This document shows positions 2,692 to 63,399 of a DNA stretch of 64,000 nt, one piece after another. Position 1 is the stretch's first letter; every line of letters begins with the position of its first letter. Below the pieces are notes generated by a model that worked only from the letters and a program-made list of their open reading frames with translations, was not told the origin of the DNA and searched no databases. The stretch is from Octopus sinensis (lineage: Eukaryota). A program made the translations under genes and the position numbers. Where the stretch lies: contig NC_043002.1 of NCBI RefSeq assembly GCF_006345805.1, positions 44,888,001-44,952,000 of the forward strand, written 5' to 3'.

Positions 2692-5600
2692 TTCTCTTGC
2701 ATGTAGTTGCATATCTAGACATGCTCATATATATTTAAATGGTAAACCTCTGGAAAGTTTTACAGATTCTTACAGTTCTAGTGATGGATTAGATCTGTAG
2801 TCATCGAATTAGTTTTCTCCTTTCTGGTTTTGAGAAGCCTAATTTCTCAGGATTGGTATTTATGCAGCGGGTTACATACCCCAGGGCTCCAATAATTACA
2901 GGTATAAACCTGAACTTGTAATCTGGATAGAGTAACTGCAGATTTCTCAATAGTTCAGCATAGGTTTTTCTCTTTTTCACTGATCTTCAGCTTTATGCAA
3001 ACATCTGCTGAGCAGCTAATTTCCACAACTGTGCACAGTTTCTCTTCTATATCCCAAATCATTATATCAGGCCTGTTCTGCTTACATTTTACTGAGGTCT
3101 TCACTGGTACATTCCAGCAGTTTCTTTTCTTATTATGAGTAGCTACGGCTTCTACCATAGTGTGGGTTCTTATTTCTTTGTTCTTGGGATTATCCTTCCG
3201 ACGGATATCATTATAGAGTGTTCTAGCTAAAACGTCATGTCTCATCGGTAGATAATACCGTGATGAGATTTTCGCACAACTGCTTATGATGTGCATGATA
3301 TTTTCAGTGTGAACTCCAGAAAGTCTGCATCGATTGTCACATTTTACGGCTTTTCCTGCATCTCTATCCCTTTTGTGCATCAGGTACTAGTTGACATTTC
3401 CCGTTCCTGGATTGAAAAAGCATACCATTCAAAGTGGGAGGTAGTAATCCAGCTATTCGTCCATGATAAACTGCTTTGATGATCGATGCTATTATTATCA
3501 CGGAGCTTTCTGCTGACATATCCATGCATAGTCTTCTGCTCACATAAGCTCATCTTTTCATATATTGCGGTAGAGTCGTACAACGTCTTTGGGCATGTAT
3601 TCTAGGTTATCTGACAAAGTGTGTTGCACAAGGAGCTGCCTTCTAAGTCTTATGATGTTATTAGCTTCACGTATGAAAACTTGATCAATGGATGCACTTC
3701 GACGCTTGTTGGTTAAAAGATGTTGCCGAAGGGATACGATGCGACATTCAAATGCATTTTCGATTGCTGTTAAGCCTCTGCCGCTTTGTTTTCGTTTAGG
3801 AAGATGCGATCTACGTCACTGTTTATGTGGAAATTATGTGTGCTTGCTAGTATTTTTCGGGTTTTCACATCAATGGCTCGGATTTCATCAAGCGTCCAAT
3901 CAAGCAGCACCACAAATAAATTGTGGGCCAATGTTTTATTGAATGCAGAGAGTTCTGAGGTCCAAATAAGATATATTTTCACCCACCCTTAGATACCTGT
4001 AACATTCCTCGTTAGATATAGAAGGAAACATTCAAATCATTGATGGAGATGTTACTAGTCTGGTTTATAGTTTTCCTCCTTTTCACAGCCATATAACAAC
4101 ATTTATCCTGACCAAACTCCAACGCTAAATCCTTTGAGAATGTTGTAACTAGGTCAAGGTTCTTTTTCATATCATGCCTATTCTTCGCATAAAGTTTTAA
4201 GTCATCCACAAAGAAACAGTGTGTAATTTTGTTATTTCTGTTTCCTTGTAAACCAGTGAAATATCCTTCAGTCTTCCTTAACATGAATGACAAGGGGTTT
4301 ACTGAAAGTATAAGCTACATCACAGAGAGGTTGTCTCCTTCGAATATGCTTTTGCGATACTGTATTCTATCTGTGATAATACATTCACTCTTTGTGTTTA
4401 ATTTCATGATCAGTCAGGTCAGCTATGGCTTTGACTATCTCACTGGAACTTTAACAAGTCGAAGGGCTTCTAGTATCGATGAGCGGGGATCAGAGTCAAA
4501 GGCTTTCTTGTAGTCTAGCCACATTGAAACTAGGCTCCTTCTATGTTCTCGCACATCTGACACCACAGTTTTTGTTGATTAACAATTGCTCAGCACGTCC
4601 CCAGACTCCCTTCTTCCCAGCTGCTTGTTCTACAGTGATATTGTTATTGGTTTCACAATGGTCCTGGAGGAAGCAGTTTAAACATGCTGTATATATCTTA
4701 TACATTAAGTTCTAGCATGCAATTGGCCGGTAGTTTTTTACCATGTGGGTGGATCTGCATTTGGGGATCAATTTTGTCTCTGCCAGAGCTAAACAGTGTG
4801 ATATACTACAGTTCCCAATGAAAGCTTGCTGGTACAGATTGGTAAGATGTGGTCGGCAGAATGTTAGCTTCTTATACCAATATCCAACAATCAAGTCTCT
4901 TCCAGGTGCTTTTACGTCTTGGAGTTTGTGCATCAGAGATGTAAGAGTTTCACCATCAATGTTGCATGTCTTGGATGTAAGGCAGAAGCAATAGCTTTTC
5001 GGATTTCTTCCAGCTACAAAGCATCTTGGTTTCATTCCTTCTTTTCACTCGAGATTTTCTTCCAGAAGTCGTCTATATCTTCTCATGAAGGAGCCATTAA
5101 TGTGGTTTGGCTAACAGGCACTATAGAATCTGTTGGAATGACGCTAGCTGCGAAACCACGTGATGGTCTTATATCATTCATACATTCGTTTTTGTTTATA
5201 GAGTTTGGAAGAAGATTAATTTTAGATTTTTCTATAAAGTTACAGTTACTAACCTTCTTTCTATGTTCTAAAAATGCTGCTTCTTGGCGTAGTTGCTTGG
5301 CAGTAAAATGATTTAGTTCTGGATGCAGTTCGTCCCAATATGCTTTCAATCAATTCATATAGCCAATAGCAGAGTTTTGTTTCGTTTTTTCGACGCATTT
5401 AAATAGATCATTGTTCAACTCATAACAATGATCTGAGAAATGAGTTTTGTAGTTACAGTTCCTTCTGTATCTGCACCTAGAAAGAATTTGTTTGCGTGTT
5501 GAACTTTTGTCAACGTTCTGTTCCTCGGTTGTGATGTTGATGTTGCGTCTAGCCCTGTTGTATGTAGTAACTCTCTGCATACTAAATTCAAGTTTCAGTT

Positions 5601-9238: not shown

Positions 9239-9654
9239 GCGGCGTGCTGGCCGAGACGTTAGCACGCCGGGCGAAATGCGTAGCCGTATTTCGTCTGCCA
9301 TCACGTTCTGCGTTCAAATTCCGTTGAGGTTGACTTTGCCTTTCATCCTTTCGGGTCGATAAATTAAGTACCAGTTACGCACTGGGGTCGATATAATCGA
9401 CTTAATCCGTTTGTCTGTCTTTGTTTGTCCTCTCTGTGTTTAGTCCCTTGTGGGTAGTAAAGAAATAGGTATTTCGTCTGTCTTTACGTTCTGAGTTCAA
9501 ATTCCGTCGAGGTCGACTTTGCCTTTCATCCTTTCGAGTCGATAAATAAAGTACCAGTTACGCACTGGGGTCGACATAATCGACTTAATCCGTTTGTCTG
9601 TCCTTGTTTGTCCCCTCTATGTTTAGCCCCTTATAAGTAGTAAAGAAATATATA
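9239..9654 (+). mobile_element. SINE family B with duplicated body, bounded by a 16-bp target-site duplication
   Basis: One head followed by two tandem bodies (GTATTTCGTCTG...TAAAGAAATA); AAGGGTATTCTGTTCA at 9220-9235 and 9655-9670. Confidence 0.85.
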
Positions 9655-16651: not shown

Positions 16652-17910
16652 CAAAGGCCTTTGATAAAGTCGATCATGGAATGATATGTCACAAACTGCG
16701 TGATCTTGGCATAGTTGGAAAATTGGGAGAATGGCTTCATGACTTTCTGAAGAATAGACGTCAGGTGGTAGCAGCCAATGGGGCCACTTCCATTAACACA
16801 CAAATAGTGAGCGGTGTTCCGCAGGGCACTGTTTTGGGACCACTACTGTTCATAATAGCCCTCTCAGACATGCCCTCAGACACGCAGAGAGCCACGATCA
16901 CAAGTTATGCAGATGATACAAAAGTTTCACAGGCAATACAGAACCCTGAAGACACTAAGCACCTGCAATGTGAGCTGGACGAAATATACAAGTGGGCTGA
17001 AAAGAATAGCATGCAGTTCAATGCTGAAAAGTTTCAAGCTCTATACTATCAGCATGCAAAACTAAATGCAATACCCAATGAATACACTGGACCCGGAGGA
17101 ATAGCAATCACAGAGGCACAATCAGTGCGTGACCTGGGTATTTACATGAGCGATGATGCAACCTTTCGTGTTCATGTTGCTAAATTGGCAATGAAATGTA
17201 GACGACTGGCCGGATGGATTCTCAGAACCTTTAGAACAAGAGAACAAGAAACCATGATGGTCCTCTGGAGGACACTTGTCCTAAGCCACTTTGACTATTG
17301 CTCTCAGTTATGGTCACCATCCAGTGTCAAGTTGATCACAGAGCTCGAGGCGATCCAACGTAGCTACACGAAGAAGATAGCCTCTATGCAGAATGTAAGC
17401 TACTGGGAAAGACTCAAGAGATTAAAACTATATTCCTTGGAGCGTAGGCGGGAAAGATATGCCATAATATACATCTGGAAGATCCTGGAGGGACGTGTCC
17501 CAAACTTTGGCATCGAGAGTTACACAAATGCCAGAACTGGGCGCCACTGCGTGGTGTCTAGGACTCCAAATTTGCCATCAAGATGTAGGACAAGATACTG
17601 TGATAGCCTGGGCTTCCGTGGCCCACAGCTCTTCAATATCCTCCCGAAGAACCTGAGAGACCTGCATGGGGTGGATGCAGATGTCTTTAAAATGGAACTG
17701 GATCTCTTCCTGTCAGGTGTCCCAGATGAACCAACTTCACGGCAGGAGGTGCAGATGAGGGCAGCTGCATCGAACTCTCTCATGCACCAATTGGCAGTTG
17801 CTAAAAAGCTTTCGTGAAGTAAAACCAAGTAGCAACACCAAATGGCGGTGCCCCAGCATGGCCACAGCTCATGATCTGAAACTAGAATCAATCAATCAAT
17901 CAATCAATCA
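16652..17910 (+). mobile_element. 5'-truncated CR1-group LINE (RT C-terminal half, 3' UTR, (ATCA)n tail)
   Basis: KAFDKVDHG..SGVPQGTVLGPLLF..SYADDTK..RDLG; 3' UTR stem-loop 17844-17882; tandem (ATCA)n tail 17886-17910. Confidence 0.9.
16681..17817 (+). CDS. LINE reverse transcriptase, uninterrupted 378-aa C-terminal portion (no true start)
   Basis: ORF track; RT motifs SGVPQG.VLGP and YADD. Confidence 0.85.
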   Translation: MICHKLRDLGIVGKLGEWLHDFLKNRRQVVAANGATSINTQIVSGVPQGTVLGPLLFIIALSDMPSDTQRATITSYADDTKVSQAIQNPEDTKHLQCELDEIYKWAEKNSMQFNAEKFQALYYQHAKLNAIPNEYTGPGGIAITEAQSVRDLGIYMSDDATFRVHVAKLAMKCRRLAGWILRTFRTREQETMMVLWRTLVLSHFDYCSQLWSPSSVKLITELEAIQRSYTKKIASMQNVSYWERLKRLKLYSLERRRERYAIIYIWKILEGRVPNFGIESYTNARTGRHCVVSRTPNLPSRCRTRYCDSLGFRGPQLFNILPKNLRDLHGVDADVFKMELDLFLSGVPDEPTSRQEVQMRAAASNSLMHQLAVAKKLS

Positions 17911-19025: not shown

Positions 19026-19217
19026 CAGAGAGAGAGAAAGAGAGTAATGTTATAAGACACCAATGTTTACTGGAGATAGCAGTCGATTTACGACGCTATG
19101 GTAAAGCTTCAATGTGTATATACTGGCAAAGACGTGTGAGGGCAGCGAACATAAAAAAAAATTCTGGCTTACCTCTAGGAGGAGCATTAGATAAATGGAC
19201 AAACCAGAATCGGATAA

Positions 19218-19287
19218 TCTGGTACCTAGGTTTCGGACTCTTCAAATACATTTGTTATTGTAAATTTGATAGTTTTCTTCAGCTAGA
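19218..19287 (-). ncRNA. degenerate type I hammerhead motif with extended stem II
   Basis: Minus: TCTAG | CTGAAGA | AAACT..TCAAAT TTACA..TGTA TTTGA..AGTCC | GAAA | C CTAG G | TA | CCAGA. Confidence 0.5.
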
Positions 19288-19558
19288 TTTACCTGGACAA
19301 TATTTCAAATGTTGCTACATCAATACCAGTATACTTGCCTGAACGCCTACTCGTTAACAGACCGAGAACAGTGGAAAAATGTTCAATGCAAAATAAAATA
19401 TTGCAATACAAATGTATTACTTTCCAGTAAAATAAAGCAATGTAAATGTAGAAGTGTATATATATACATATATACACCCACACACACACACATATATACT
19501 ATTTTATTTGTTTCAGTCATTTGACTGAGGCCATGGTGGAACACAGCTACTGCCACTC

Positions 19559-26699: not shown

Positions 26700-29481
26700 T
26701 CTGACACTCCCATCATTATATCAAACAATATTTGTTCCATAATAATATTTTTAAAACAATCAATATTTAAAAAATTATTATTTTCGCCCATTGAAAGAAG
26801 AGAAAAATACAATTATTCATCCCTCGATAGGGGAAATATAACAGCAAAAATTCAACAAGTTTCACGATAATAATTCCAACAGCAAAATAAACTTACTTTA
26901 AGCCACAATGAAGTGAACAGGTCGACGCCAAAAAAGTGAATGTTTATGTATTGAAATAATCAATGAATTTATTTGGCACTGAATGTATAGAGAAATTTAA
27001 TTTATGGGATACACCCGTAAGCGTTTTGTGCAATAACGTAAACGGAACAGTCAAACAATTGAATGAGAATGATGAACTGAGAAAAAAAAAACGAAAGAAA
27101 TTTTACCAAAATTTTTTCGGAAAGTTTAGTCTGTTGCTTTCAAAGAAAATTCAACACCTATTTTCAGGCCCAAACAGAGCGTGCCGTTTGCGGTAGTAGA
27201 CCAGGTCAATTAAGAATTTAAAAGGTTGTAAAGCCTCAATATAATTGAAGAAATTGAGCATGCAGACTGGGCAGCACAGGCGGTCTACGTAAGAAAAATA
27301 AATAATAAGCTAAGAGTGTTCGCAGACTTCTCAATCGGATTAAACAACTGTTTACTCACACAATTATCCACAACCAAGCCCAGAAGTATTTGCTAAACTA
27401 AACGAAGAGAAAATTTTCTCGAAGTTAGACCTCTCAGAGGCGTACATTCAAATTCAGTTAGAGGAAGAATGCACATATCTACTAACAATCAACACGCACC
27501 GTAGATTGTACAAGTTCAAACAACTGCTGTTTGGAGTAAAAGTGTCACCCGCCATATTCCAACAAATAATGGATGCGATGTTCAGTGAGTGCGACTTTGC
27601 CATCGCGTACCTCGATGGATGTTGATAAAGAGCGAGTCTCGGGTGCAACAGGTCGAACACATAAAGGAAGTATTCGAGAGAATAAGTGAATACAGGCTAA
27701 AATAAGTGAATACAGGCTAAAATTAACAGAAAAAATGAGAATATTTGACGGAAAAAATAAAATATCTATGTCAAGTAATCGACGATAGTGGACGCAGAGC
27801 GGACCAATCAAGGGTAACGACAATACGGAATATACCGCGCTCTGGCGAATGTGACAATGCTACAAACATTCCTAAGCTTGGTAAAGTATTATCAAATGTA
27901 TATCCTAAATATATATAAGGTAAAGGCACCTCTTAACGAATTACTAAAAACAAATGCCAAATGCGATTGGACAGAGAAATTCCAGAAATCATTTAACGAG
28001 TTAAAAGATGTGTTAACTTCAGACTTGTATCTTACGCATTTCAGCCCAAAGTTAGAGATGCTAGCGAGTATGGGATAGGAGCCGTGCTCCTACACAAGTA
28101 TAACGATGACAGGAGAAAGGCCATAGCTCACACATCAAGGACATAATTGCCGACGGAAAAGAACTATAGCCAGATTGAAAAAGACGTGTTGGCTATTATA
28201 TTTGGCGTGCAAAAATTCCACAAGTTCATTTGCAGAAGAGATTTTTGTTTGCAAACGGCCGGGACTGAAAATACGATGGTGAAAATACAATGGTCTCGAT
28301 TGCATATCAATTTGGCAGGCCCAGTAAATGGATATTATTACTTGATAGTAGTGGACAGCTACACGAAATGGTCTGAGGTCACGAGGTGTAAATGACCAAC
28401 CTCATATACGGTAATAAACTTCTTACACGATATAATTGTCTCTGATAACGGAACATAGTTTGTATCTTGTGAGTTTAAAAGATTCTGCGAGATGTTCGCA
28501 TTAGAACATAAAACTATAGTACCGTATCACCTTAGATCGAATGGAAGATCCGAAAGATTCGTGGACATTTTAAAGAGAGCTTTAAAGAAAGCTAATATGA
28601 AAGCCACGGATCGTGATCTAACAATTCTTAAGGGTATAAGGGTATACAGGGTAACTCTGAGCCCAAATGCGACGGAAGGATGTTCAGCAGCAGTATTAAT
28701 GTTTACTAGAAAGGTGAAACTGTTACCAGTGAAGAAAAAAATACGTGCTGGTAAAAACGTGCCAAAATTCTTATTTCAGTCATTTGACTGCGGCCATGCT
28801 GGAGCACCGCCTTTAATCGAGCAACTCGACCCCGGGACTTATTCTTTGTAAGCCCAGTACTTATTCTATCGGTCTCTTTTGCCGAACCGCTAAGTGACGG
28901 GGACGTAAACACACCAGCATCGGTTGTCAAGCAATGCTAGGGGGACAAACACAGACACACAAACACACACACATATACACACACATATATATATATATAT
29001 ACATATATACGACAGGCTTCTTTCAGTTTCCGCCTACCAAATCCACTCACAAGGCTTTGGTCGGCCCGAGGCTATAGTAGAAGACACTTGCCCAAGGTGC
29101 CACGCAGTGGGACTGAACCCGGAATCATGTTGTTGGTAAACAAGCTACTTACCACACAGCCACTCCTTCGCCTATATATGTGATAAGGTATATGTAAGAA
29201 TGTTCAAAAATAGCAAGCAATACTGGGAAAAAGGAGAAATTGTAACATACATAGGAAGAATGATGTATGGTATAAGAAGCAGAGATGGAATGGAAAGGAG
29301 ACATAGAAATCAGCTTAACAAAAGAGTCATAGAAAAGGAACCAACAAGAGTAGAAATACCGATATATTGGCTATATGAAACTTTTCAGGTTCCAACACCG
29401 CTACAGGATCGAAACCAGACGTACAAGGAAAGAAAGAACACTGAATTACTAAAAACAGACCCTAAGTAGAAAAAATATTGA

Positions 29482-29531
<50 letters not shown>

Positions 29532-29892
29532 GAGGAATTGGGGTGAATAAAAGAAATTTATTGTTAAATAAGATAACTAAAAGGGGAGATGTTGTATAGT
29601 GAAACTGTATATCCCTTCTGGTAAAAAAAATACAGCCATTATAAATAGATCAGTAGCCGGTCGTCAAGAGGGGTGGGGGTGAGAGTCGAAGAGATGAGAG
29701 TCGACAGTTTAAATCGGTGTTTTGTGGAGCTATCAGCGATAGTAAGACAGAAGTTAGTGTATTGCTATTCCGGTACGAACAGATACAACGGTATCCGATG
29801 ACTAATAAGTATTGTGGCTACTAGCGTAAAACAGCAACTACAGTACAACGGCAGTCAGACATCACGCCAGTAGAGGAACCCACTTTAGAACA
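26700..29892 (+). mobile_element. degenerate Ty3/Gypsy LTR retrotransposon (gag-RT-RNaseH-integrase remnants plus 3' LTR)
   Basis: FSKLDLSEAYIQI, LLFGVKVSPAIFQQIMD..AYLD (RT); EKNYSQIEKDVLAIIFGVQKFH (RNase H); YYLIVVDSYTKW, SDNGT, NGRSERFVDILK (integrase); PPT AAAAGGGGAGA then TGTTG..AACA LTR 29590-29892. 5' boundary approximate; no 5' LTR seen. Confidence 0.85.
28773..29172 (-). mobile_element. well-preserved SINE family A inserted into the Gypsy integrase region
   Basis: Complete head-to-tail copy including tail GGCGGTGCTCCAGCATGGCCGCAGTCAAATGACTGAAA. Confidence 0.9.
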
Positions 29893-29902
29893 ATATGCAT
29901 CA

Positions 29903-29936
<34 letters not shown>

Positions 29937-30319
29937 TATATATAAAGGAGGAATTGGGGTGAATAAAAGAAATTTATTGTTAAATAAGATAACTAAAAGG
30001 GGAGATGTTGTATAGTGAAACTGTATATCCCTTCTGGTAAAAAAAATACAGCCATTATAAATAGATCAGTAGCCGGTCGTCAAGAGGGGTGGGGGTGAGA
30101 GTCGAAGAGATGAGAGTCGACAGTTTAAATCGGTGTTTTGTGGAGCTATCAGCGATAGTAAGACAGAAGTTAGTGTATTGCTATTCCGGTACGAACAGAT
30201 ACAACGGTATCCGATGACTAATAAGTATTGTGGCTACTAGCGTAAAACAGCAACTACAGTACAACGGCAGTCAGACATCACGCCAGTAGGAGGAACCCAC
30301 TTTAGAACAATATGCATCA

Positions 30320-30322
<3 letters not shown>
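29528..30322 (+). repeat. tandem duplication (period 416 bp) of PPT + Gypsy 3' LTR + flank
   Basis: 29528-29905 is nearly identical to 29944-30322; LTRs 29590-29892 and 30006-30309; units separated by (TA)n. Confidence 0.9.
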
Positions 30323-30353
<31 letters not shown>

Positions 30354-30355
<2 letters not shown>

Positions 30356-31510
30356 TAGCATTAAAGACCCGTCGTTGCCGGGTCATAGTGCAAGTGCATG
30401 TATATATGTGTATATATATGTGTACATATTACATGTACATCTATATATATACATCTACACATAAAATACAAAATACAAAGTTATATCTTGATATCGCTAG
30501 TGATAATACTCAAAATATATAACAGACTGGAATCGTTAGCCCGTCTCTTGTAATTTCGATCAATTGTATTTTGTCCTCCCTCTTGTATAGAAGTGTGGCT
30601 ACAATCCAGCCTTCCCCTACTTCTGGGTGTGGGGGGTTATTTTTAATTTTTTCCGGGACGTCCTACGTCCCAGATATAAAGGTAAAAATAAAATATTTCC
30701 ACTTTGCAAGTTCGAGTCGAGTACTCCCTTGCACGCTCCGTTGACTCGAACTTTGCTTCTATTGTGGCGAATTTACCGCCTCTGATTAGATATATTTCAT
30801 AGTCGCACCAAGACACTTTTCGAAGGTGCTCTCCTCCATGTGTTCAAATCTTCTTTTTTCTCTACATTGTATACTTTATACACAATAGTCTTTTCTTTAA
30901 TTTAATTTTTTATTATCCATCTGGACTATTCCATTTCTGCACGCTAATTTTATTTTTAATTTATACCCATTCATGTGAAACCACTTATTCAAGTTCAAGT
31001 CATTGATGCAATTTTATACCAATTGCTATTTTTACTTTTGTATGTTACGATTATATTATACTTTAGTTCGATTTTAATTATTAATTACTACATATAATTC
31101 AATTGTTATTATTATTTTTATTGTTAAAGTGAAAATATCTGATATAAAATAGAGAAACGTTTTTGTTTCACTTTTAACACATAATACTGAAATAGTGGAG
31201 AAGATATGATATTGCTATGGGCTCGCTCTAGGCAAGAAATTGAACATTTTTTTGCCCATGAAACTACATGGACACTAAGTAAGGCATGTGTAAAATTTGA
31301 ATGAAATTGGTTGTGTAGTTCTCAAGTTTTAGGGAATCGTAGTGGAGAAGATATGTTATTGCCGTGGGCTCGCCCTAGGCAAAATGTTCAAAAGTTTTTT
31401 TGCCGATGACACTCCCCGGACCCTAAGTAAGGCATGTGTAAAATTTGAATGAAATTGGTTGTGTAGTTCTTATTTATTTAGCAGAAACAACAGACTGACA
31501 CACGGGCCGA
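30354..31510 (-). mobile_element. non-autonomous Helitron-like element with internal tandem repeat
   Basis: ACTAG plus hairpin CCCGTCGTTGCCGGG at left; about 147-bp tandem repeat at 31193-31325 / 31340-31470. Confidence 0.65.
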
Positions 31511-39510: not shown

Positions 39511-40431
39511 CATAGATGATCACTGTATGTTGTCAATATTTGATGAATTTTTTTGTGGATTGCTTGTTGCTTTAAAAGTTATTGTGAAGTCTGTGGTTGA
39601 AAAAGAGGATGTTAGGGAAAGCAAAATGGTGGAAAATAGAAGGAAAGAGTTTGGGGAAGTCAACCCGCAGTTTTCACAAATACGTCAATACATGTATGCA
39701 TACACATGCAAGAAGCATGGACGTATATGAGAAGAGAGAAATCGAAGAGACATATGTGATCCCTGCCAACCGTTGCCTGCCACTCACACTATACATATCT
39801 ATACATCCACTCACACACGCACACAGACGCACACTCACACACACACACATATAGGGGTATGTATGTATATATATGTAAGTATTTATGCATATAATTGTTA
39901 ACAAGAAGAGTGGAGTGAGCAAATTGTTTTATTACATACATTAACAATTGCTTGACTGACATTCGAACTCTCAAGAGTATTTTTTACTTTTTTTATAATC
40001 AGTATTTGTGGCACAATTTCTATCAAAACTATATTCCATATCTGATATATTTGGAGTGATTACTCTTTTCGTCATTTATTAGGGTATTCTAGCATCTATG
40101 TTACGGTCATGACTGTACACACACACATACACACACATTCCATAGGTGTTTTTTCTATGTTCGACCAACTAACAGAGTTATTACCCGTGTTATCATTTAC
40201 TCACACGAATGAAATAGTTATGTATGTATAATATATGTTTGTAGGCTGTCCAACGACAGCTTAGCTGGCCGAAACTTCGAAGTCACTGTCAACAATATTC
40301 TTGCTGAAGAATAATAAATTTGTATTCCAGAAAAGTATTTAGTGGCCCATCAAATTAATGTAAAATTGACTTTTTTATAACTGAACATAAAAGCAAATAT
40401 CATATATAATATATATAATAATTATACATAT

Positions 40432-40535
40432 AGGCGCAGGAGTGGCTTTGTGGCAAGAAGTTTGCTTTCCAACCACATGGTTCCGGGTTCAGTCCCACTG
40501 AGTGACCCGTTGGGCAAGTGTCTACTACTATTGGG
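40432..40535 (+). mobile_element. SINE family A head fragment
   Basis: GGCGCAGGAGTGGCTTTGTGGCAAG..GGTTCAGTCCCACTG. Confidence 0.75.
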
Positions 40536-40678
40536 AAGGGGCTGGTGACACAATCGTTTCATTCACACATTGAGTTTGGTGATACTAGTTGCGGATTCTA
40601 GCTCGCTCTGATACTGAGTTGAGTTGGTGCCTTCTAGTATCTCAAAATTCAATATATAATCATTTATGATTATAGTAT

Positions 40679-40785
40679 TCTACGCTGAAGAGAAAAGAAG
40701 TTTCGGTAAGATAGAATTATTTAATATTTAATATTTAATTCTTATGCTTTCCTAAAAACTTGATTTCGAAACGTACGTCCGTAGA
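40679..40785 (+). ncRNA. type I hammerhead ribozyme with greatly extended stem II
   Basis: TCTACG | CTGAAGA 40685-91 | GAAA-AG-AAGTTT ... AAACTT-GA-TTTC | GAAA 40768-71 | CGTACG | TC | CGTAGA; perfect 6-bp stem I, canonical G10.1-C11.1, GUC triplet. Confidence 0.8.
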
Positions 40786-41074
40786 TAACTTAAAAATGTA
40801 TGATAGATTGCCGTCAATTCATTCTCCCTTACCTGTTTGTGTCTGCCTTCCAATTGCTGTCTTTACTGAGATCTCCCTTTTTAGTAGAAGAAATAGCTAT
40901 AACTCTTTGACTGCTATTTCTAAATTCGGTATGTGGTAAGGCAATTCGTTGCTAAACCCTTTATTGCTTAGTATTACTTAAATTTTCCTCGAATGAGGCT
41001 TTTACATGCCGAAGACTACTTGGTGAAATTGATAATTATTCCAAATTAATTAATTTCACCCTTCATTATTACGG

Positions 41075-41218
<144 letters not shown>

Positions 41219-48279: not shown

Positions 48280-49368
48280 TATATTTTTTATATCGTGCTT
48301 TCACTTCACTACCGAGCGCAGCTCTGTGTGCCTTGGGTATGTGCTGTGATTTGTTGTGATGCTCTGGTGGTTATTTTATGGAAAGTGTTCTTCGTAGGAT
48401 GTGTGCAATTTTCTGTATGTTATATGTGTTTGTAAGTCCTGGTGTTTTTGTTATGTATTTGTCTGAATATTTTTTATCATGCCTAATTATGATAGGAATT
48501 GTTTCTGTTTTTAGATTCCACATTCTGGTTACCTCTATTTCCAGGTCTTTGTATTTTGAAAGTTTCTCCATTTCTTTTAGAGACACGTTGTCATCCGCTG
48601 GTATTGATACATCAATTAGAAAACATTTTTTTTCTTCATGATCTCTGACAACTATATCTGGTCTATTGGCCTTAATTTCTCTATCTGTGCGTATTGGCAT
48701 ATCCCAGAGTATGGTTGCTTTCTCGTTTTCTGTGACCTTTTCTGGTATGTGCCTATACCATCTTTTTTCTGTTGTTATTCCCTAATGTTGGCAAAGTTTC
48801 CAGTGTATATAGGTCCCAACTCTGTCGTGTCTGTGAATATATTCCTTCTTAGCCAGGACTGGGCAGCTAGAGATAATATGATTTATTGTTTCTCGTCCAT
48901 CTCCACATATTCTGCAGTTACTTGTTATATTTCTTTTCATTACATGTTTTTGGTAATTTCTGGTGGGGAGGCTTTGGTCTTGTGCTGCAATTAAAAATCC
49001 TTTTGTCTCTGCTTTGAGTCCTGAGCTTCTCAACCATTGTTGGGATTTTTCTTTGTCTATTTCTTTTGCATTTAGTTTAGTCCAGTATTTGCCATGAAGG
49101 GGCTTTTCTTGCCATCGTTTTATCATGGTTCGTTGCTGTTCTATTTTTAGTTTGGATTTCATTTGTTTTATAGCTTTTGTTGCTTCTTCTTCTTCTTCTT
49201 CTTCTTCTTCTTCTTCTTCTTCTTCTTCTTCTTCTTCTTCTTCTTCTTCTTCTTCTTCTTCTTCTTTTTCTTCATATTTGTTAGGTGGTATGATTTCTTG
49301 TTTGTATTTGTCGCTTCCTTAAATACTGAGAACAGTTTTTTGTTTTGCTCGTGTTTTGCCGCTATTTG
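48280..49368 (-). mobile_element. 5'-truncated R4/Dong retrotransposon embedded in (TAA)n
   Basis: WQEKPLHGKY, FLIAAQDQSLPTRNY, CRICG..ETINHIISSC..RHD, NRPDIVVRD..IDVSIP; 3' UTR runs into (TAA)n at 48170-48275; (TAA)n also at 49370-49455. Confidence 0.92.
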
Positions 49369-52844: not shown

Positions 52845-53045
52845 ATTTATTTATTCATATGCATACATATATAAATACATACATACGTATGTGTATATAT
52901 ACATTATATAAATATCTTATATATCTTATTTCTACTTTCATTCTCTTATTTCACCTTTCATTCTCTTATTTCCCTCCATATTCACTATCTTCTGCTTTTC
53001 CATGATAATTCGAATTCAAATATTTCCTCAGTTAAACCTTCCCAC

Positions 53046-53096
53046 ATCGTCTCTGATGAAGGCATATCCATATTATTCCAGAAACAATTGTACGAC
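53046..53096 (+). ncRNA. degenerate type I hammerhead motif
   Basis: GTCT | CTGATGA 53053-59 | A GGCATA..TATTCC A | GAAA 53081-84 | CAATTG | TA | CGAC. Confidence 0.5.
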
Positions 53097-53267
53097 TATT
53101 TCCTTATAAATGTCCTGAAAAGTGCTTGGTTTCGTTATCTCATTCTATCTAATATATATATGTAAAGTTAATCCAAACATGAAAACACCAAGAGAAAACA
53201 CAACAACGCGAGGACGTGGAACAAATATAGTATTATTGAACGCTCAGGAAGGAAGGGAAGAAGGAGG

Positions 53268-54584: not shown

Positions 54585-54960
54585 GCAGATGTAACTGTGT
54601 GGTAAGGAGCTTGCTTTCCAACAACATGCTTCCGGGTTTAGTACATCTGTATAGCGAGTGTCTGCTATAGCTTCGGGCCGACCAAAGCCTTGTTAGTAGA
54701 TTTTATAGACGGAAACTGAAAGAATCCCGTTGTTTGTGTGGTGGTTTGTCTTTGTGTCTCTGTTAGTGCCTCCACCACCGCTTTACAGCTGGTCTTGATG
54801 TGTTTACGTACTGAACTTAGAGGTTCAGCAAAACAAACTAATAGAATAAGTACCAAGCTTAACAAAAAATAAGCACTGGGGTCGTTTCATTCGACTAAAT
54901 ATTCTTCAAGGCGCTGCCCCTGCATGGCCACAGTCAAATGACTGACACAAGTAAAAGATA
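54585..54960 (+). mobile_element. SINE family A
   Basis: Head to tail GCATGGCCACAGTCAAATGACTGACACAAGTAAAAG. Confidence 0.8.
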
Positions 54961-56179: not shown

Positions 56180-56560
56180 AAATGCATGTGTGGTTGTGTG
56201 ATAAGAAGTTTGATTCCAGATTCAATCCCACTGCGCGACCCCTTGGGCTAGTGCTTCTACCATAGTCTCAGGCTAACCAAAGCCTTGTGAGTGGATTTGG
56301 TAGACAAAAACTGAAAGAAGCCCGTCGTATATGCATGTATGTGTGTGTCTTTGTATTTGTGTTTGTCTATCACCACTTGACAACTGATGCTGGTTTGTTA
56401 ACGACCCCGTAAACTAGCAGTTCAACAAAAGAGTCCGATAGAATAAGTGCCAGGCTTTAAAAAGTAAGTCTTGGGGTCGATTCGATTTATTCGACAATAA
56501 CCCTTCTAGCTGGTGCTCCAGTGTGGCCGCAATCAAATAACTGAAACAAGTCAAAAGTAG
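56180..56560 (+). mobile_element. SINE family A
   Basis: Same body and tail as above. Confidence 0.8.
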
Positions 56561-58928: not shown

Positions 58929-60598
58929 ATCAAAAATGCCTTTTTGATATCCACTAGTTTATTTCTGAAGGAAAATGTTCAACTGAAATGGCATTAGGGA
59001 ATCCCGGTAAAATGGCTTAGAACTGCAAATTGTATGCTACGTTTGTATGTTGCCAACGAGAATCCTTTTAACACGATGAAATTAATTGATGCCTACATAA
59101 TGACGGTTTATGTGCCAATGTGGTTCACAATTAAACGCAACTCTTCCTCGGAAAATGGGGCTCTAGATGTACTCAAGGCGACTGAGTCTTCCGGAGAAAT
59201 GGATCGAGTGGTACAAGACATTGTATTTCCAGTTATGCAACAAAATGCTTTCTTTGTGCCCCCAGAAAATATCTTACTAGTCATAATAATCGATGAACGG
59301 AGCCACATTCGAGAACTAGCATGGAGGCGCATAAAGCAGGCTCGAACACAGTATAAAGGAAAATCTGTGTGACCTTTCAAAATTCCTACCCTAAACGTTG
59401 CTGCCTCAATCTACATGGACATGGACTGGTAGGACACTATTGTTACTGAACCATCTCTAACACAGGCATTTTCCCATGAAGAAATCGATACCTTCATTCA
59501 ACAGTGGCATTTGATGCAACTGGAAAAATTACTGTGCCACACCCAAGCTGTAGAGAGATGTGTAAAACTCGTGACAGAAGCATCATCTAATATTTGAAGT
59601 GAGAACAGTCGAAACGGTTTCATTGGGAGTCGAATCGAATCAAGAGAAAAGATTTCGGTGTTCGAGACAAAAAAAAAAGCCTTCAGATTGAAAAGTAATA
59701 CAGCAACAACCAATTAGAGTTATTTCGTTTTAGCTATTTTGAACATAACAAACATAAAACTATTGAAAAGGTTGCAAGACGCAATGGAAATTTTAGAAAA
59801 TAAAAATAAGAAATAAGTGGAAATTTTACCGGTGAGTGTGTTAAATAATAAGGCACTAAAAAAGAATGACTCTTCCCAGACAACAAAACATTATGTCGTT
59901 TTAGGAAATTCCAAAACAATAAATCTTTGACAGTTCTATTCTTTTTCTGAGAGTGAGATGCTAATTTATGTCTACGAAAAAAAAAATAATTAGCTTTATT
60001 ATTGGAACGAAAAAGAATGCACTAAAACGATTCGTATTATTTAGTTACAAGGAATTATTTTGAATAAATTGGCAATGTTAATTATTTTTATCGCCAAAAT
60101 GTGTCAAGAATCAAAAATTAGTTTAAGCGTAATTTTATTTTAATGTGTGTGTAATCTAGACCTCATGTAATACATATATTCGGTGACATAGTATCAAGAA
60201 TAATAAAGAAACTGGAGTAGAAAAGTCTGTTTATTTTACATAATTTCGAAATTTTAAGTGCTTTGCAGAGTCTAAAGATATGAAGTTTAGAGCATGAGAT
60301 TTTAACAGTCTTCTTTTTAAAGAATTTTGCAAAGGAAATTTGATTCATAATAATGAATATACAAAATAAAATGAGGATCAACAAATGTGTTCTAAATTGA
60401 TTTTTCGCTCCTTATTCAAAATTTAAAGTGGGCTGTGGAACTGAAAGTTTAAGTTTAACAACTTTAGATTCTTAACCCTGTTGTTGTTACAGGATTTCGC
60501 AGTCATAAATATATGCTTAAAAACATATTTCAAAACTCTGTGTACAAAGCACCCTTTTCGCTCCACGCTAATACATATATGCATACATGTGTGTGTGT

Positions 60599-60707
<109 letters not shown>

Positions 60708-60727
60708 TTATATATATATATATATAT

Positions 60728-60990
60728 GACTGTGTGGTAAGAAGCTTGCTTCTCAACCACATATCGTGTGTGTGTGTGTGCGTGTATTTGTGTGTCTGTG
60801 TTTGTCCCACACTTCCACTTGACAACTGATGTTGGTTTGTTTACGCCCCCGTAACTTAGCGGTTCGGTAAAAATACACGGACTGATAGAATAAGTACTAG
60901 GCTTACAAAGAATAAGTCCTGCGGTCGATTTGTTCGAATAAAGGTGGTGCTTCAGCAAGACTACAGTCAAATGGCTGAAACAAGTAAACG
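60728..60990 (+). mobile_element. SINE family A (internally deleted)
   Basis: GACTGTGTGGTAAGAAGCTTGCTTCTCAACCACAT head; CCGTAACTTAGCGGTTCGG; tail CAGTCAAATGGCTGAAACAAGTAAA. Confidence 0.8.
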
Positions 60991-61176
60991 GAAAGAATAT
61001 ATATATATATATATATTATGTGAAATAGAAAGATGAATAATCTTGTAGTAGATTAATCAAAAGTTTAACCGATACCTTAGTAGCAAAAATCACAGCAGTA
61101 AACAGCACGGTTGGAGGTACAACCATCTGGCGTTGCAACCGTGCGTTGGTGCGGATAATTGAAATTAAAACATTAT

Positions 61177-61590
61177 TGGTGAATTGAAGAAATGGAGCTG
61201 AACGCAGATTGAACAGAAATCGTTTTATTTCATTCTACACGTGTTTCGAAAGGCACAAATTACCAAAATCCGATTGAATAATGGGACCATATTGTGTCTT
61301 TCTCTTCAGGAAGAAAAAAGGAAATCCGTTGGAAAAACAAAAACAGAACAGAGGCGGAGCAAAAAACAAATCGAAGCACAGTTTAGGAGCACAGTTCGAT
61401 TTGTTTTTTGCTCCGCCTCTGTTCTGTTTTTGTTTTTCCAACGGATTTCCTTTTTTCTTCCTGAAGAGAAAGACACAATATGGTCCCATTATTCAATCGG
61501 ATTTTGGTAATTTGTGCCTTTCGAAACACGTGTAGAATGAAATAAAACGATTTCTGTTCAATCTGCGTTCAGCTCCATTTCTTCAATTCA

Positions 61591-61593
<3 letters not shown>
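61177..61593. repeat. inverted repeat, 199-bp arms (61177-61375 / 61395-61593), 19-bp spacer
   Basis: Arm ends pair symmetrically (coordinate sum 122770); the opposite-strand ORFs 61235-61489 and 61281-61535 translate identically outside the spacer. Confidence 0.95.
61455..61541 (+). ncRNA. type I hammerhead ribozyme with extended stem II (mirror copy on minus strand at 61229-61315)
   Basis: TTCTTC | CTGAAGA 61461-67 | GAAAG-A-CACAA ... TTGTG-C-CTTTC | GAAA 61523-26 | CACGTG | TA | GAA-T-GAA; canonical core, GUA triplet. Confidence 0.8.
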
Positions 61594-61635
<42 letters not shown>

Positions 61636-63399
61636 ATATATACATGTCAAATTAGTGAACCCATCACAAATGTGTTGCTAACTTCTGGATATTGGTGAGA
61701 AAAATAAACTGTGCCATTGTCAACAGTTTATCACTCCCTATTGGTTGAATTAACAGCAATTCAAAATATGTAAGAAATGAGAAAATGAGTTATCTTATCT
61801 TAACCAGTTTTTCCGGTACTCATTCTGTAAATCGGCTTAAAATCTTCCAGGCGATTATGTTGTTCTACTTGGAGTCACTTGGAATATGATTGAATAAGAG
61901 ATTTCGGGTCGTTTTGTGGCTTCCTTATATTTTATTTTAGATTATTTTATTTCGACTGAAAGCCGTACTATATTTTCAACTTCACGAATATTCTTCTGCT
62001 AGAAGCATACGCTCTGCCACTACATTTTAATGTAATTTAATAGTATAACGAGCGCGTTATACAATACATGTACATATACAAGGCGTTTTAAGAGACAACT
62101 TTGATACGCTCAGCTAGTTATCAAACGTAACGAACGAAAATTCCCGTATTACTTCCGTTGACGCTGTAAATCTGTACTGACTATGGAATCGGAGCTATCA
62201 AATACTGGCGTATAAACTACCAGACTGTAGTGAAGGAATCATTCTAGGACTTGTTTTGAAAATGACAATTTCATATTTAGGGTGACAGCAGTCAGGCACA
62301 TCTAGGATAATCACAGTTGCACCCAATTTATGAAAACACTACATACTTAATCGCATCCCATGAGTGACATTACTACGTCACTTGAAATAATGCTATTGCA
62401 TTTTTTTTTTCTTTCTCAAAAGAGCATCTGACTATGATGTGGTTTCTGTCATCTGGATAATATCTAGGAACGTACTGCAAGATAACTAAACATGGAACAT
62501 TTTCCATATATCGAAATAAGTCATACTGAAATAGAAGCAACTGAACGAAACATATATTTAAATAACGGGAAAATCTTTAAGTCTCAATATTGAGTTCGAG
62601 TCTTCCTCTACTTATAAAGATTAAAGAGTGATGGGCTTCTCTTAGATTGTTTTCCAGGTATGGCTATGTACTTAAGAAGTTTACTTTTCACTCAGCTGGT
62701 TCAAGATCAGTCATACTGCACCAAACATGGGACAAGTATCTTCTATAATCAATTAAAAAAGAAAACAATCAATTCAAATAAACGAATAATAAAATTAACA
62801 GAGAACAAGAGGACGTGCACATGGAATGTATAAGTTTGACGTTCAGTATAAAGAGAGCTTGACGTTTCATGTATAGTCCTTCGTCGGAAAGGAGAAACGG
62901 AAGAGTCCAAAGAAGGAAAAGAAATCACCGACAGCATGTGTGCAGTTACGTTGCATCCTTTTGTTTAGCCAGATCTATGCACACGCGCGCGTATGTGTGC
63001 GCGTGTACGTAGGTGTGCGTAGGTGTGCGTATGAGTGTGTGTGTGCCTGAGTCTGTATGTCTCTGTGTATCTGTGTCTGTGTGTATGTATGTGAGTGTGA
63101 TAGTAAGCGTATGAGTTAACCTATTTGTGTCTATTTTGCACCGCTTGAAAGCCACTGTTGGCTTATGTCCCTATTATTAGCAGTTCGGCATAAAGGTTGG
63201 GAGAATAAGCAGTACACATTTTAAAAAATAAGTGTCAATGTCATCAATGAAAATGCATAGCATCTTAATATGGCTTCAGCCGAACAAACGAGATATCTCA
63301 ATATTCGTCGTCCGTCAGATGTGTGTATTTAATTTTCTCGTGGGCTATTGTATCTTTTGCTGATATATACATATATATATATATATAAGCATAAACAGC

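What the first reader, a model, noticed from the sequence alone, without database searches (positions are those of the whole stretch)
61018..61593. 417-bp fold-back encoding a canonical hammerhead ribozyme on both strands
Seen: perfect 199-bp arms with a 19-bp spacer carrying a GCACAG direct repeat. Each arm holds an intact type I HHR (CUGAAGA, G10.1-C11.1, GAAA, palindromic stem III A-CACGUG-U, GUA site, stem I UUCUUC/GAAUGAA) with a long hairpin stem II. The unit is (TA)n - 160 bp unique - left arm - spacer - right arm - (TA)n, i.e. a ~360-bp element plus an inverted copy of its first 199 bp. Established: PLE terminal repeats carry HHRs and PLE insertions often show inverted partial repeats. 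Inference: this is a recent non-autonomous PLE- or retrozyme-like insertion. A transcript in either direction would carry the ribozyme and could also fold into a 199-bp dsRNA hairpin that competes with it, a plausible ADAR or Dicer substrate in a lineage known for heavy A-to-I editing.
Basis: partly seen in the sequence, partly recalled or inferred. Interest (0 to 1): 0.8.

Follow-up and report, generated by a model that had tools for sequence, protein, structure and literature searches.

The report
Hammerhead-ribozyme retroelement with inverted partial copy
A short non-coding mobile-element insertion in a (TA)n microsatellite of what looks like an octopod genome carries an intact self-cleaving hammerhead ribozyme motif and a perfect inverted copy of its first 199 bases; this arrangement is already known for Penelope-like elements and retrozymes, so it is real but fairly ordinary.

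Summary
Arms 61177-61375 and 61395-61593 are 199 nt and 100% complementary, with the 19-nt spacer GCACAGTTTAGGAGCACAG, and the 575-bp unit sits between (TA)n tracts. Each arm carries a complete type I hammerhead core, cut after A61534 (+) and after 61236 (-). Helix II is a 55-nt hairpin and helix III is the palindrome ACACGUGU.

Rfam Hammerhead_1 matches it end to end but below threshold (14.8 bits against 34). A strict descriptor expects 0.003 hits per simulated window. The same window holds a second, sequence-unrelated intact hammerhead of the same build (40679-40785) and one or two decayed ones, each 200-300 nt upstream of a (TA)n tract.

The best reading is a non-coding, about 360-nt, Penelope-like-element-dependent retroelement (a "solo retrozyme" or pLTR-like unit). 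I infer that its 5' 199 nt were duplicated in inverted orientation during reverse transcription. Opposite-strand hammerhead pairs, (TA)n targeting and inverted partial copies are all published features of such elements.

A read-through transcript in either direction would fold into a 199-bp dsRNA (-392 kcal/mol) that buries the ribozyme. I could not retrieve family copies, reads or expression data. Verdict: new member of a known kind, modest interest.

The parts
60997..61018 (.). (TA)n remnant on the left of the insertion; part of a longer (TA)n microsatellite that is also interrupted by a SINE at 60730-60996
   Evidence: Other copies of the SINE in the window do not end in (TA)n, so the tract is genomic and not a SINE tail.
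61019..61176 (-). Unique 158-nt 3' part of the full-length copy (in ribozyme sense the element runs from 61394/61375 down to 61019); contains a 9-bp local hairpin GCACGGUUG/CAACCGUGC
   Evidence: No other copy in the window.
61177..61375 (-). Left arm: the 5' 199 nt of the full-length copy, sense on the minus strand
   Evidence: inverted repeat I1, 100% complementary
61229..61315 (-). Type I hammerhead motif of the full copy (C3 at 61309; predicted cut between 61236 and 61235)
   Evidence: descriptor hit; exact mirror of the plus-strand motif
61376..61394 (.). 19-nt spacer GCACAG-TTTAGGA-GCACAG. In ribozyme sense it reads CUGUGCUCCUAAACUGUGC and is probably the element's own 5' terminus or 'tail'. 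The arms begin with the self-complementary TCGAA/TTCGA.
61395..61593 (+). Right arm: inverted copy of the first 199 nt, sense on the plus strand. It ends at ...TTCAATTCACCA next to (TA)n, where the full copy continues AATAATG (an A/T-rich junction).
61455..61541 (+). Type I hammerhead motif: helix I UUCUUC/GAAUGAA, CUGAAGA, G10.1-C11.1, 55-nt helix II hairpin, GAAA, palindromic helix III ACACGUGU; predicted cut after A61534
   Evidence: (RF00163, 14.8 bits, model positions 1-45 of 45)
61594..61642 (.). (TA)n on the right of the insertion

Best explanation
This is one insertion of a short (about 360 nt), non-coding, hammerhead-bearing retroelement. It is of the kind described as solo non-LTR retrozymes or pseudo-LTR-derived, Penelope-like-element (PLE) dependent non-autonomous elements. 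It sits in a (TA)n microsatellite of an octopod-like genome. The full copy lies on the minus strand (61394/61375 down to 61019). Its 5' 199 nt are repeated head-to-head on the plus strand (61395-61593).

Shown: the anatomy, the intact ribozyme core, the absence of coding capacity, and the (TA)n setting.

Inferred: the inverted arm arose in the same event as the insertion. In the favoured route, the plus-strand cDNA was primed from the left (TA)n 3' end and copied the RNA to its 5' end. It then snapped back on the 5-nt self-complementary TCGAA/TTCGA, copied itself for 199 nt, and was joined to the right (TA)n at the A/T-rich AATAAT site. Twin priming from both target ends gives almost the same product. 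Either route explains the 100% identity of the arms, the shared inner end and the unequal outer ends.

The ribozyme is the metazoan 'dimeric' type. As a monomer, helix III is only 2 bp plus a palindromic tetraloop, and two sense copies can form an 8-bp helix III. In the element's normal life it would process multimeric or paired transcripts. At this locus each transcript direction carries one ribozyme, located in the 3' arm, so the 199-bp perfect hairpin forms first and locks it away. The locus is therefore most likely a dead-end copy whose only plausible RNA product is a long dsRNA hairpin.
For: - **Inverted repeat and junctions:**
- **Complete hammerhead core, type I topology:**
- **Chance expectation:** 0.003 per window for the strict descriptor. 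A relaxed rule (CUGANGA upstream of GAA, an 8-nt A...U palindrome and H) expects 0.08 per window, with none of 400 simulations reaching 4, against 4 independent loci observed.
- **Second intact hammerhead at 40679-40785:** same build (CUGAAGAG-AAA...UUU-CGAAAC, 76-nt helix II, palindromic ACGUACGU, GUC site), different helix I and distal helix II sequences, and no other similarity to this element (RF00163 20.2 bits).
- **Decayed copy at 19217-19288 (-):** helix II would read GGACU/AGUCC but for two G-to-A changes.
- **(TA)n association:** all loci lie 200-300 nt upstream of a (TA)n tract, against a background of 0.18.
- **Dimer folding:** cofolding forms the intermolecular 8-bp helix III, -47.3 against 2 x -18.3 kcal/mol.
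- **Non-coding:** no ORF above 89 aa, no Pfam hit, no protein-database hit.
- **Size and composition:** 357-376 nt, 37% GC.
- **Hairpin dominance:** -392 kcal/mol in both directions.
- **Host:** the best named relative of a LINE RT ORF in the window is from Argonauta hians.
- **Literature:** PLE hammerheads with palindromic helix III, opposite-strand pairs 100-700 bp apart, mostly solo (PMC4209133); inverted partial copies, tails and (TA)n targets (PMC8557442); retrozymes of 170-400 nt with low GC (PMC7229834); solo retrozymes and pLTR ancestry (10.64898/2026.07.22.740005); Penelope abundant in coleoids (PMC8967140).
Against: - No second copy of this particular element was found in the window, in the protein collection or in JGI metagenomes (five chance matches). 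Mobility and family conservation are therefore unproven.
- No head-to-tail tandem, which defines active retrozymes.
- No PLE RT/GIY-YIG ORF in the window.
- The Rfam score is below the gathering threshold.
- The monomer minimum-free-energy fold keeps helix II but not helices I and III.
- The whole-element fold is no more stable than shuffles, z = -0.46.
- The direct (not inverted) GCACAG repeat in the spacer is not predicted by simple twin priming and is only accommodated, not explained, by snap-back.
- Cleavage, transcription and read support are untested.
Confidence: 0.65

Rival explanations
1. The insertion is real, but the inverted arm arose later at the DNA level. The route would be a replication template switch or fold-back repair of a break at the fragile (TA)n tract, using the TCGA microhomology, and not reverse transcription.
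For: Long (TA)n tracts flank the unit and can form cruciforms. The arm and spacer boundaries carry a self-complementary TCGAA/TTCGA. The outer junction is directly at (TA)n. None of the other hammerhead loci in the window has a fold-back, so the architecture is not a constant family trait here.
Against: PLE insertions are documented to carry inverted partial copies generated at insertion (PMC8557442), and opposite-strand hammerhead pairs 100-700 bp apart are reported (PMC4209133). The palindrome centre lies 218 bp from the right-hand (TA)n tract and 358 bp from the left-hand one, so a break at (TA)n would need long resection. The sequence alone cannot separate the two routes.
Confidence: 0.15
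2. The inverted arm is an assembly or library artefact (a chimeric palindromic read or polymerase template switching). The true locus would hold a single 357-376-nt copy.
For: The arms are 100% identical. Palindromes next to microsatellites are error-prone, and PLE structures are noted to cause assembly problems (PMC8557442). No independent assembly of the locus could be retrieved.
Against: The arms stop after 199 nt exactly at the (TA)n junction, and the contig continues into different unique sequence on both sides. Missing-adapter chimeras usually give read-length palindromes. The 19-nt spacer does not resemble a sequencing adapter (my own knowledge). The architecture matches a published biological pattern.
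Confidence: 0.1
3. It is a foldback or MITE-type DNA transposon (61177-61593, with 199-bp terminal inverted repeats), and the hammerhead match is incidental.
For: The inverted repeats make up nearly the whole 417-bp unit and the flanks are A/T-rich.
Against: The hammerhead motif is expected 0.003 times per window, and the same ribozyme build recurs in unrelated, non-foldback elements of the window. There is no TA target-site duplication: the left flank ends ...TTAT and the right flank starts TATA. The (TA)n tracts bracket 61019-61593, not 61177-61593. No other copy is present in the window.
Confidence: 0.03

Closest known systems
Minimal or variant type I hammerheads in the pseudo-LTRs of Penelope-like elements and their widespread solo copies (Cervera & de la Pena 2014, PMC4209133; Craig et al. 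2021, PMC8557442)
   Same: Type I topology. G10.1-C11.1 pair. Longer than usual helix II and short helix I. Small palindromic helix III, implying action as a dimer. Mostly solo motifs. Pairs on opposite strands 100-700 bp apart. Inverted partial copies at insertions. (TA)n as preferred target.
   Different: No RT/GIY-YIG ORF or second pLTR nearby. [quoted passage not shown] Helix II is much longer (a 55-nt hairpin; 76 nt in the second locus) than the published 6-8 bp. The two copies share their inner end, so the inverted copy lacks the 3' 158 nt.
Metazoan non-LTR retrozymes (Cervera & de la Pena 2020, PMC7229834) and their 'solo retrozyme' monomers (Li, Clavereau & Pollet 2026, bioRxiv 10.64898/2026.07.22.740005)
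   Same: Non-coding unit of 170-400 nt with low GC and one type I hammerhead. Helix III of 2 bp plus a palindromic tetraloop, as in invertebrate and axolotl Amex2 motifs. Monomeric dispersed copies are described. Thought to be mobilised by PLEs.
   Different: No head-to-tail tandem here, so two cuts and a circular RNA cannot be made from this locus. Helix II is not the canonical 4 bp with a loop 2 able to contact loop 1. No expression evidence.
Newt satellite 2, Schistosoma Sm-alpha and Aedes repeat hammerheads that act as dimers (cited in PMC7229834 and in PMC3088659, Fig. S8)
   Same: The palindromic helix III and loop 3 would extend to an 8-10-bp helix in a dimer. Cofolding of two copies here forms that helix.
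   Different: Those motifs sit in direct tandem arrays that supply the partner in cis. Here the partner is on the opposite strand and so is absent from any single transcript.
L1 twin-priming inversions and hairpin self-priming by reverse transcriptases (general knowledge, not tested here)
   Same: They give head-to-head inverted segments created during target-primed reverse transcription, with microhomology at the junctions.
   Different: L1 twin priming normally gives little or no overlap between the two segments. Here 199 nt are duplicated perfectly.

Membership tests
Hammerhead ribozyme, type I | Conserved core: C3 U4 G5 A6 N7 G8 A9, G12 A13 A14, A15.1-U16.1, H17 not G | tested here: met
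   CUGAAGA 61461-67, GAA 61523-25, A61526...U61533, A61534
Hammerhead ribozyme, type I | Three helices around the core, with helix I open and helices II and III closed | tested here: met
   Helix I is 6-7 bp with one bulge or mismatch. Helix II is 5+5 bp with an A.C mismatch inside a 55-nt hairpin. Helix III is 2 bp plus a tetraloop, or 8 bp in a dimer.
Hammerhead ribozyme, type I | Score at or above the Rfam RF00163 gathering threshold (34 bits) | tested here: not met
   14.8 bits over the full model length, E 0.49 in 131 nt. No hit in the whole window at gathering. The loss comes from the long helix II insertion.
Hammerhead ribozyme, type I | Conservation of the core with compensatory change in the helices among relatives | tested here: inconclusive
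   Only in-window relatives were available. The 40679-40785 motif and the 19217-19288 relic keep the core and the palindromic helix III while helices I and II differ. No alignment of this element's own family could be obtained.
Hammerhead ribozyme, type I | Self-cleavage at the predicted site; loop 1-loop 2 tertiary contact | not testable with these tools
   Needs in vitro transcription of monomer and dimer constructs.
Metazoan non-LTR retrozyme | Head-to-tail tandem repeats of 150-450 bp, each with a hammerhead | tested here: not met
   One sense copy plus an inverted partial copy; no direct repeat. It fits only the 'solo retrozyme' category of 10.64898/2026.07.22.740005.
Metazoan non-LTR retrozyme | Non-coding unit of 170-400 nt with GC below 45-50% | tested here: met
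   357-376 nt, GC 0.375. ORFs are at most 89 aa and arise only from the palindrome. No Pfam or protein-database hits.
Metazoan non-LTR retrozyme | Expression as linear and circular RNA | not testable with these tools
   No transcriptome access.
Penelope-like element (autonomous) | ORF with a telomerase-like RT and a GIY-YIG endonuclease between pseudo-LTRs | tested here: not met
   The only RT ORFs in the window are LINE-type RVT_1 far from the locus. The element is therefore at most a non-autonomous derivative.
PLE-type insertion architecture | Inverted or tandem partial copies, microsatellite ((TA)n) target, hammerhead in the repeat | tested here: met
   compared with the descriptions in PMC8557442 and PMC4209133. 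The geometry differs in that the copies share their inner end.
Any mobile-element family | Multiple dispersed copies in the genome | not testable with these tools
   The source genome is not searchable here. No other copy in the 64-kb window.

The most novel reading that the evidence does not exclude
Octopod genomes may carry a very large, largely unannotated population of type I hammerheads with 55-76-nt helix II hairpins, embedded in short (TA)n-targeting retroelements. Apart from the flagged locus, the remaining 63 kb of this window holds one intact and one or two decayed motifs. All score 15-20 bits with Rfam RF00163, below its 34-bit threshold, so standard annotation would miss them; the giant squid survey reported only 235 Hammerhead_1 hits (PMC6962438). 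[quoted passage not shown] Fold-back copies such as this one would then be natural sources of long perfect dsRNA (hpRNA-like, substrates for ADAR or RNAi) directed against the family.
Probability: 0.35. Interest if true: 0.45.

Novelty: new member of a known kind. Interest (0 to 1): 0.3.

Why it matters
The locus adds a clean cephalopod example to the known link between hammerhead ribozymes and PLE or retrozyme retroelements. It also shows that threshold-based Rfam annotation misses this long-helix-II variant. The perfect fold-back records how such elements can generate inverted duplications at insertion, with the centre marking the template's 5' end. If transcribed, it would be a ready-made 199-bp dsRNA in a lineage reported to have extensive A-to-I editing. 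None of this changes current understanding. Its value is as a well-delimited test case for cleavage assays, and for editing or small-RNA mapping.

Tried and rejected
- **Rfam on the whole fold-back.** It gave only plant and animal miRNA-precursor and snoRNA models (for example MIR8562, 124.8 bits, below its gathering score of 211). Any perfect long hairpin produces such matches, so I rejected them.
- **Rfam at gathering thresholds on the whole window.** Nothing.
- **Exact look-ups of three window ORFs in the assembly collection.** None is on record, so there is no independent assembly of the locus.
- **Protein-database search with concatenated six-frame translations of the element.** This was a device to catch ORF calls on related copies. 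There were no hits even at E <= 10.
- **Metagenome scan for CCTTTCGAAACACGTGTA.** Five matches, all on unrelated contigs; four have 56-69% GC and none has a hammerhead-compatible upstream core. These are chance matches.
- **blastn of the element against the window, and of the four hammerhead loci against each other.** No similarity beyond the core boxes and (TA)n.
- **tRNA or SINE-head scan.** None.
- **Test of whether the single sense copy is unusually structured, like viroid-type RNAs.** z = -0.46, so it is not.
- **Search of the 416-bp x 2.1 tandem at 29489-30354 for a hammerhead.** None found.
- **MITE or TA target-site-duplication reading.** Rejected on the junction sequences.
- **Simple twin priming to a common RNA 5' end.** It predicts an inverted hexamer at the centre, but the observed GCACAG repeat is direct. 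I therefore rank snap-back slightly higher. This step is inference only.

Full report
**1. The observation**

- Arms 61177-61375 and 61395-61593 are 199 nt long and 100% complementary.
- They are separated by the 19-nt spacer GCACAG-TTTAGGA-GCACAG.
- The whole 575-bp block 61019-61593 lies between (TA)n tracts at 60997-61018 and 61593-61642.
- Further left, a 267-bp SINE (60730-60996) interrupts the same microsatellite (60598-60727). Other copies of that SINE in the window do not end in (TA)n, so the tract is genomic.
- The window is AT-rich (34% GC) and full of microsatellites and LINE fragments.
- The best named relative of one LINE RT ORF comes from the octopod Argonauta hians, at 62% identity.

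**2. The ribozyme motif**

On the plus strand of the right arm the motif reads as follows.
- Helix I 5' strand: UUCUUC, 61455-61460
- Core: C3-A9 = CUGAAGA, 61461-61467
- Helix II closing pair: G10.1 (61468) and C11.1 (61522), around a 55-nt hairpin
- Core: GAA, 61523-61525
- Helix III: ACACGUGU, 61526-61533
- Position 17: A, 61534
- Helix I 3' strand: GAAUGAA, 61535-61541

The exact mirror lies on the minus strand of the left arm (C3 at 61309, position 17 at 61236).

- **Core.** All invariant core positions are intact.
- **Helix II.** It starts with 5 bp, an A.C mismatch and 5 more bp.
- **Helix III.** It can form only 2 bp plus the tetraloop ACGU in a monomer. Two copies cofold into an 8-bp intermolecular helix III, at -47.3 kcal/mol against 2 x -18.3.
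- **Rfam.** Hammerhead_1 aligns over its full length with every core position matched, but scores 14.8 bits against a gathering score of 34 (E 0.49 in a 131-nt search). The 51-nt insertion in helix II is the main cost. At gathering thresholds the window has no Rfam hit at all.

**3. Is it more than chance?**

- **Strict descriptor.** I wrote a descriptor requiring CUGANGA, G10.1-C11.1, helix II of at least 4 bp, GAA, A15.1...U16.1, H17 and helix I of at least 4 bp. It hit 1 of 300 first-order Markov simulations of the window, about 0.003 per window.
- **Real window.** The same descriptor finds the two arm copies and an independent locus at 40685-40779 (+).
- **Relaxed rule.** This rule asks for an exact CUGANGA within 130 nt upstream of GAA, an 8-nt A...U palindrome and H. 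It expects 0.08 sites per window, and none of 400 simulations reached 4. The window has 5 sites, which are 4 independent loci.

**4. The other loci**

- **40679-40785 (+).** This motif is intact: UCUACG-CUGAAGA-G-AAA...(76-nt hairpin)...UUU-C-GAAA-CGUACG-UC-CGUAGA. It scores 20.2 bits with RF00163. It shares the build of the first motif but has different helix I and distal helix II sequences. The 542-bp element around it has no other similarity to the flagged element.
- **19217-19288 (-).** It has an exact core, palindromic ACCUAGGU and a GUA site. Its helix II would read GGACU/AGUCC but for two G-to-A changes, so it looks like a decayed copy (17.8 bits).
- **About 53053-53092 (+).** This one is weaker.
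- **(TA)n association.** In ribozyme sense, all four loci lie 200-300 nt upstream of a (TA)n tract. The background chance of that is 0.18 per site.
- **No fold-back elsewhere.** Neither the 40.7-kb locus nor the 19.2-kb relic has a fold-back.

Hammerhead-bearing short elements are therefore a recurrent component of this genome. The recurrence of one ribozyme architecture in otherwise unrelated sequence is the best comparative evidence available here.

**5. What the element is**

- **Layout.** In ribozyme sense the full copy runs on the minus strand from 61394/61375 to 61019. That is 357-376 nt at 37.5% GC, with the cut site 140 nt from the arm's inner end and 217 nt from the 3' end.
- **Non-coding.** The only ORFs (at most 89 aa) are created by the palindrome. 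There is no Pfam hit and no protein-database hit.
- **Literature match.**
  - PMC4209133: PLE pseudo-LTRs and thousands of dispersed solo copies carry type I hammerheads with a long helix II, a short helix I and a small palindromic helix III. Dual motifs on opposite strands 100-700 bp apart are reported.
  - PMC8557442: PLE insertions form complex tandem or inverted partial copies with short tails and prefer (TA)n.
  - PMC7229834: metazoan retrozymes are 170-400-nt, low-GC, non-coding units with type I hammerheads.
  - bioRxiv 10.64898/2026.07.22.740005: such retrozymes also occur as solo monomers and derive from PLE pLTRs.
  - PMC8967140: Penelope elements are abundant in coleoids.
  - PMC6962438: an Rfam survey of the giant squid already listed 235 Hammerhead_1 hits.

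I therefore file the locus as a non-autonomous, PLE-dependent, hammerhead-bearing retroelement (a solo retrozyme or pLTR-like unit). It is not a PLE proper, because it has no RT/EN ORF. It is not an active retrozyme either, because there is no tandem.

**6. How the fold-back probably arose (inference)**

- **Geometry.** The plus strand reads: target (TA)n, antisense full copy, 19-nt loop, sense copy of the first 199 nt, target (TA)n. The two copies share their inner end and differ at their outer ends.
- **Snap-back route (favoured).** A cDNA primed at the left (TA)n copies the RNA to its 5' end. It then snaps back on the self-complementary TCGAA/TTCGA, copies itself, and is joined to the right (TA)n at the A/T-rich AATAAT site.
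- **Twin priming.** Priming from both target ends gives the same geometry. However, it predicts an inverted hexamer at the centre, and the observed hexamer repeat is direct.
- **Other routes.** A later DNA-level template switch at the fragile (TA)n, or an assembly artefact, cannot be excluded without reads or population data. I give these routes 0.15 and 0.10 respectively.
- **Age.** The 100% identity of the arms fits any of these routes. It means the structure is young, or that both arms were made in one event.

**7. Consequence for RNA (partly computed, partly inferred)**

- A transcript of 61019-61593 in either direction folds into the 199-bp perfect hairpin, at -392 and -391 kcal/mol.
- In both directions the ribozyme lies in the 3' arm, after its complement, so the hairpin should zip up before the hammerhead can fold.
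- No single transcript contains two sense ribozymes, so the dimeric helix III cannot form in cis.
- At this locus the ribozyme is therefore most likely silent. The plausible product, if the locus is transcribed at all, is long dsRNA.
- The ADAR or Dicer idea is reasonable but has no evidence here.

**8. Limits**

I could not obtain other copies of this element, raw reads or expression data.
- No other copy in the window.
- No exact ORF records.
- No protein-space relatives.
- Only five chance matches in metagenomes.
- The single-copy RNA is not unusually structured, z = -0.46.
- No tRNA-like head was found.

**9. Verdict**

This is a new member of a known kind. The slightly unusual features are the very long helix II, which makes Rfam miss it, and the perfect head-to-head duplication that shares the 5' end. 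Interest is modest (0.3).

Noticed in passing
window 40536-41077 (hammerhead at 40679-40785, +): A second, intact type I hammerhead: CUGAAGAG...76-nt helix II...CGAAACGUACGUC, predicted cut after C40779. It sits in a 542-bp non-coding element that ends at the (TA)n tract at 41078 and starts next to a truncated SINE head (40423-40533). It scores 20.2 bits with RF00163, has no sequence similarity to the flagged element outside the core boxes, and has no fold-back.
   Followed up: partly
window 19217-19288 (-), element about 19026-19446: A decayed hammerhead (CUGAAGA-AAACU...AGUCC-GAAA-CCUAGG-UA) in which G-to-A changes break the 10.1 and 10.2 pairs and one helix I pair. It scores 17.8 bits with RF00163 and is bounded by (TA)-rich tracts on both sides.
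   Followed up: partly
window about 53043-53102 (+): A possible further hammerhead relic: CUGAUGA, a 22-nt helix II region, GAAA-CAAUUG-UA. The stems are weak and it could be chance.
   Followed up: partly
window 29489-30354: A 416-bp unit repeated 2.1 times at 99% identity. Each unit is about 376 bp of unique sequence followed by about 40 bp of (TA)n. I saw no hammerhead core on either strand. It may be another (TA)n-associated short element or a microsatellite-mediated duplication.
   Followed up: partly
window 60730-60996, 54731-54955, 56325-56554, 28770-28988 and others: Several copies (70-82% identical) of a SINE with an internal (TG)n stretch. The copy at 60730 is inserted in the same (TA)n microsatellite as the flagged element. 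A tRNA-like SINE head fragment lies at 40423-40533.
   Followed up: partly
window 16681-17817 (+); 2955-5035 (-); 48371-49162 (-): LINE-type reverse-transcriptase remnants (Pfam RVT_1 and zf-RVT). The best named relative of the 378-aa ORF is a hypothetical protein of Argonauta hians (62% identity), which points to an octopod source genome.
   Followed up: partly
window 9286-9650 and 31193-31470: Two further short tandem duplications: 183 bp x 2.0 at 91% and 148 bp x 1.9 at 87%. The first looks like a tRNA-derived SINE dimer.
   Followed up: no
window 61259-61511: The perfect hairpin gives strong but sub-threshold Rfam matches to unrelated miRNA-precursor models (MIR8562 at 124.8 bits, MIR5048, MIR847). 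This illustrates how inverted repeats inflate miRNA counts in genome annotations.
   Followed up: yes
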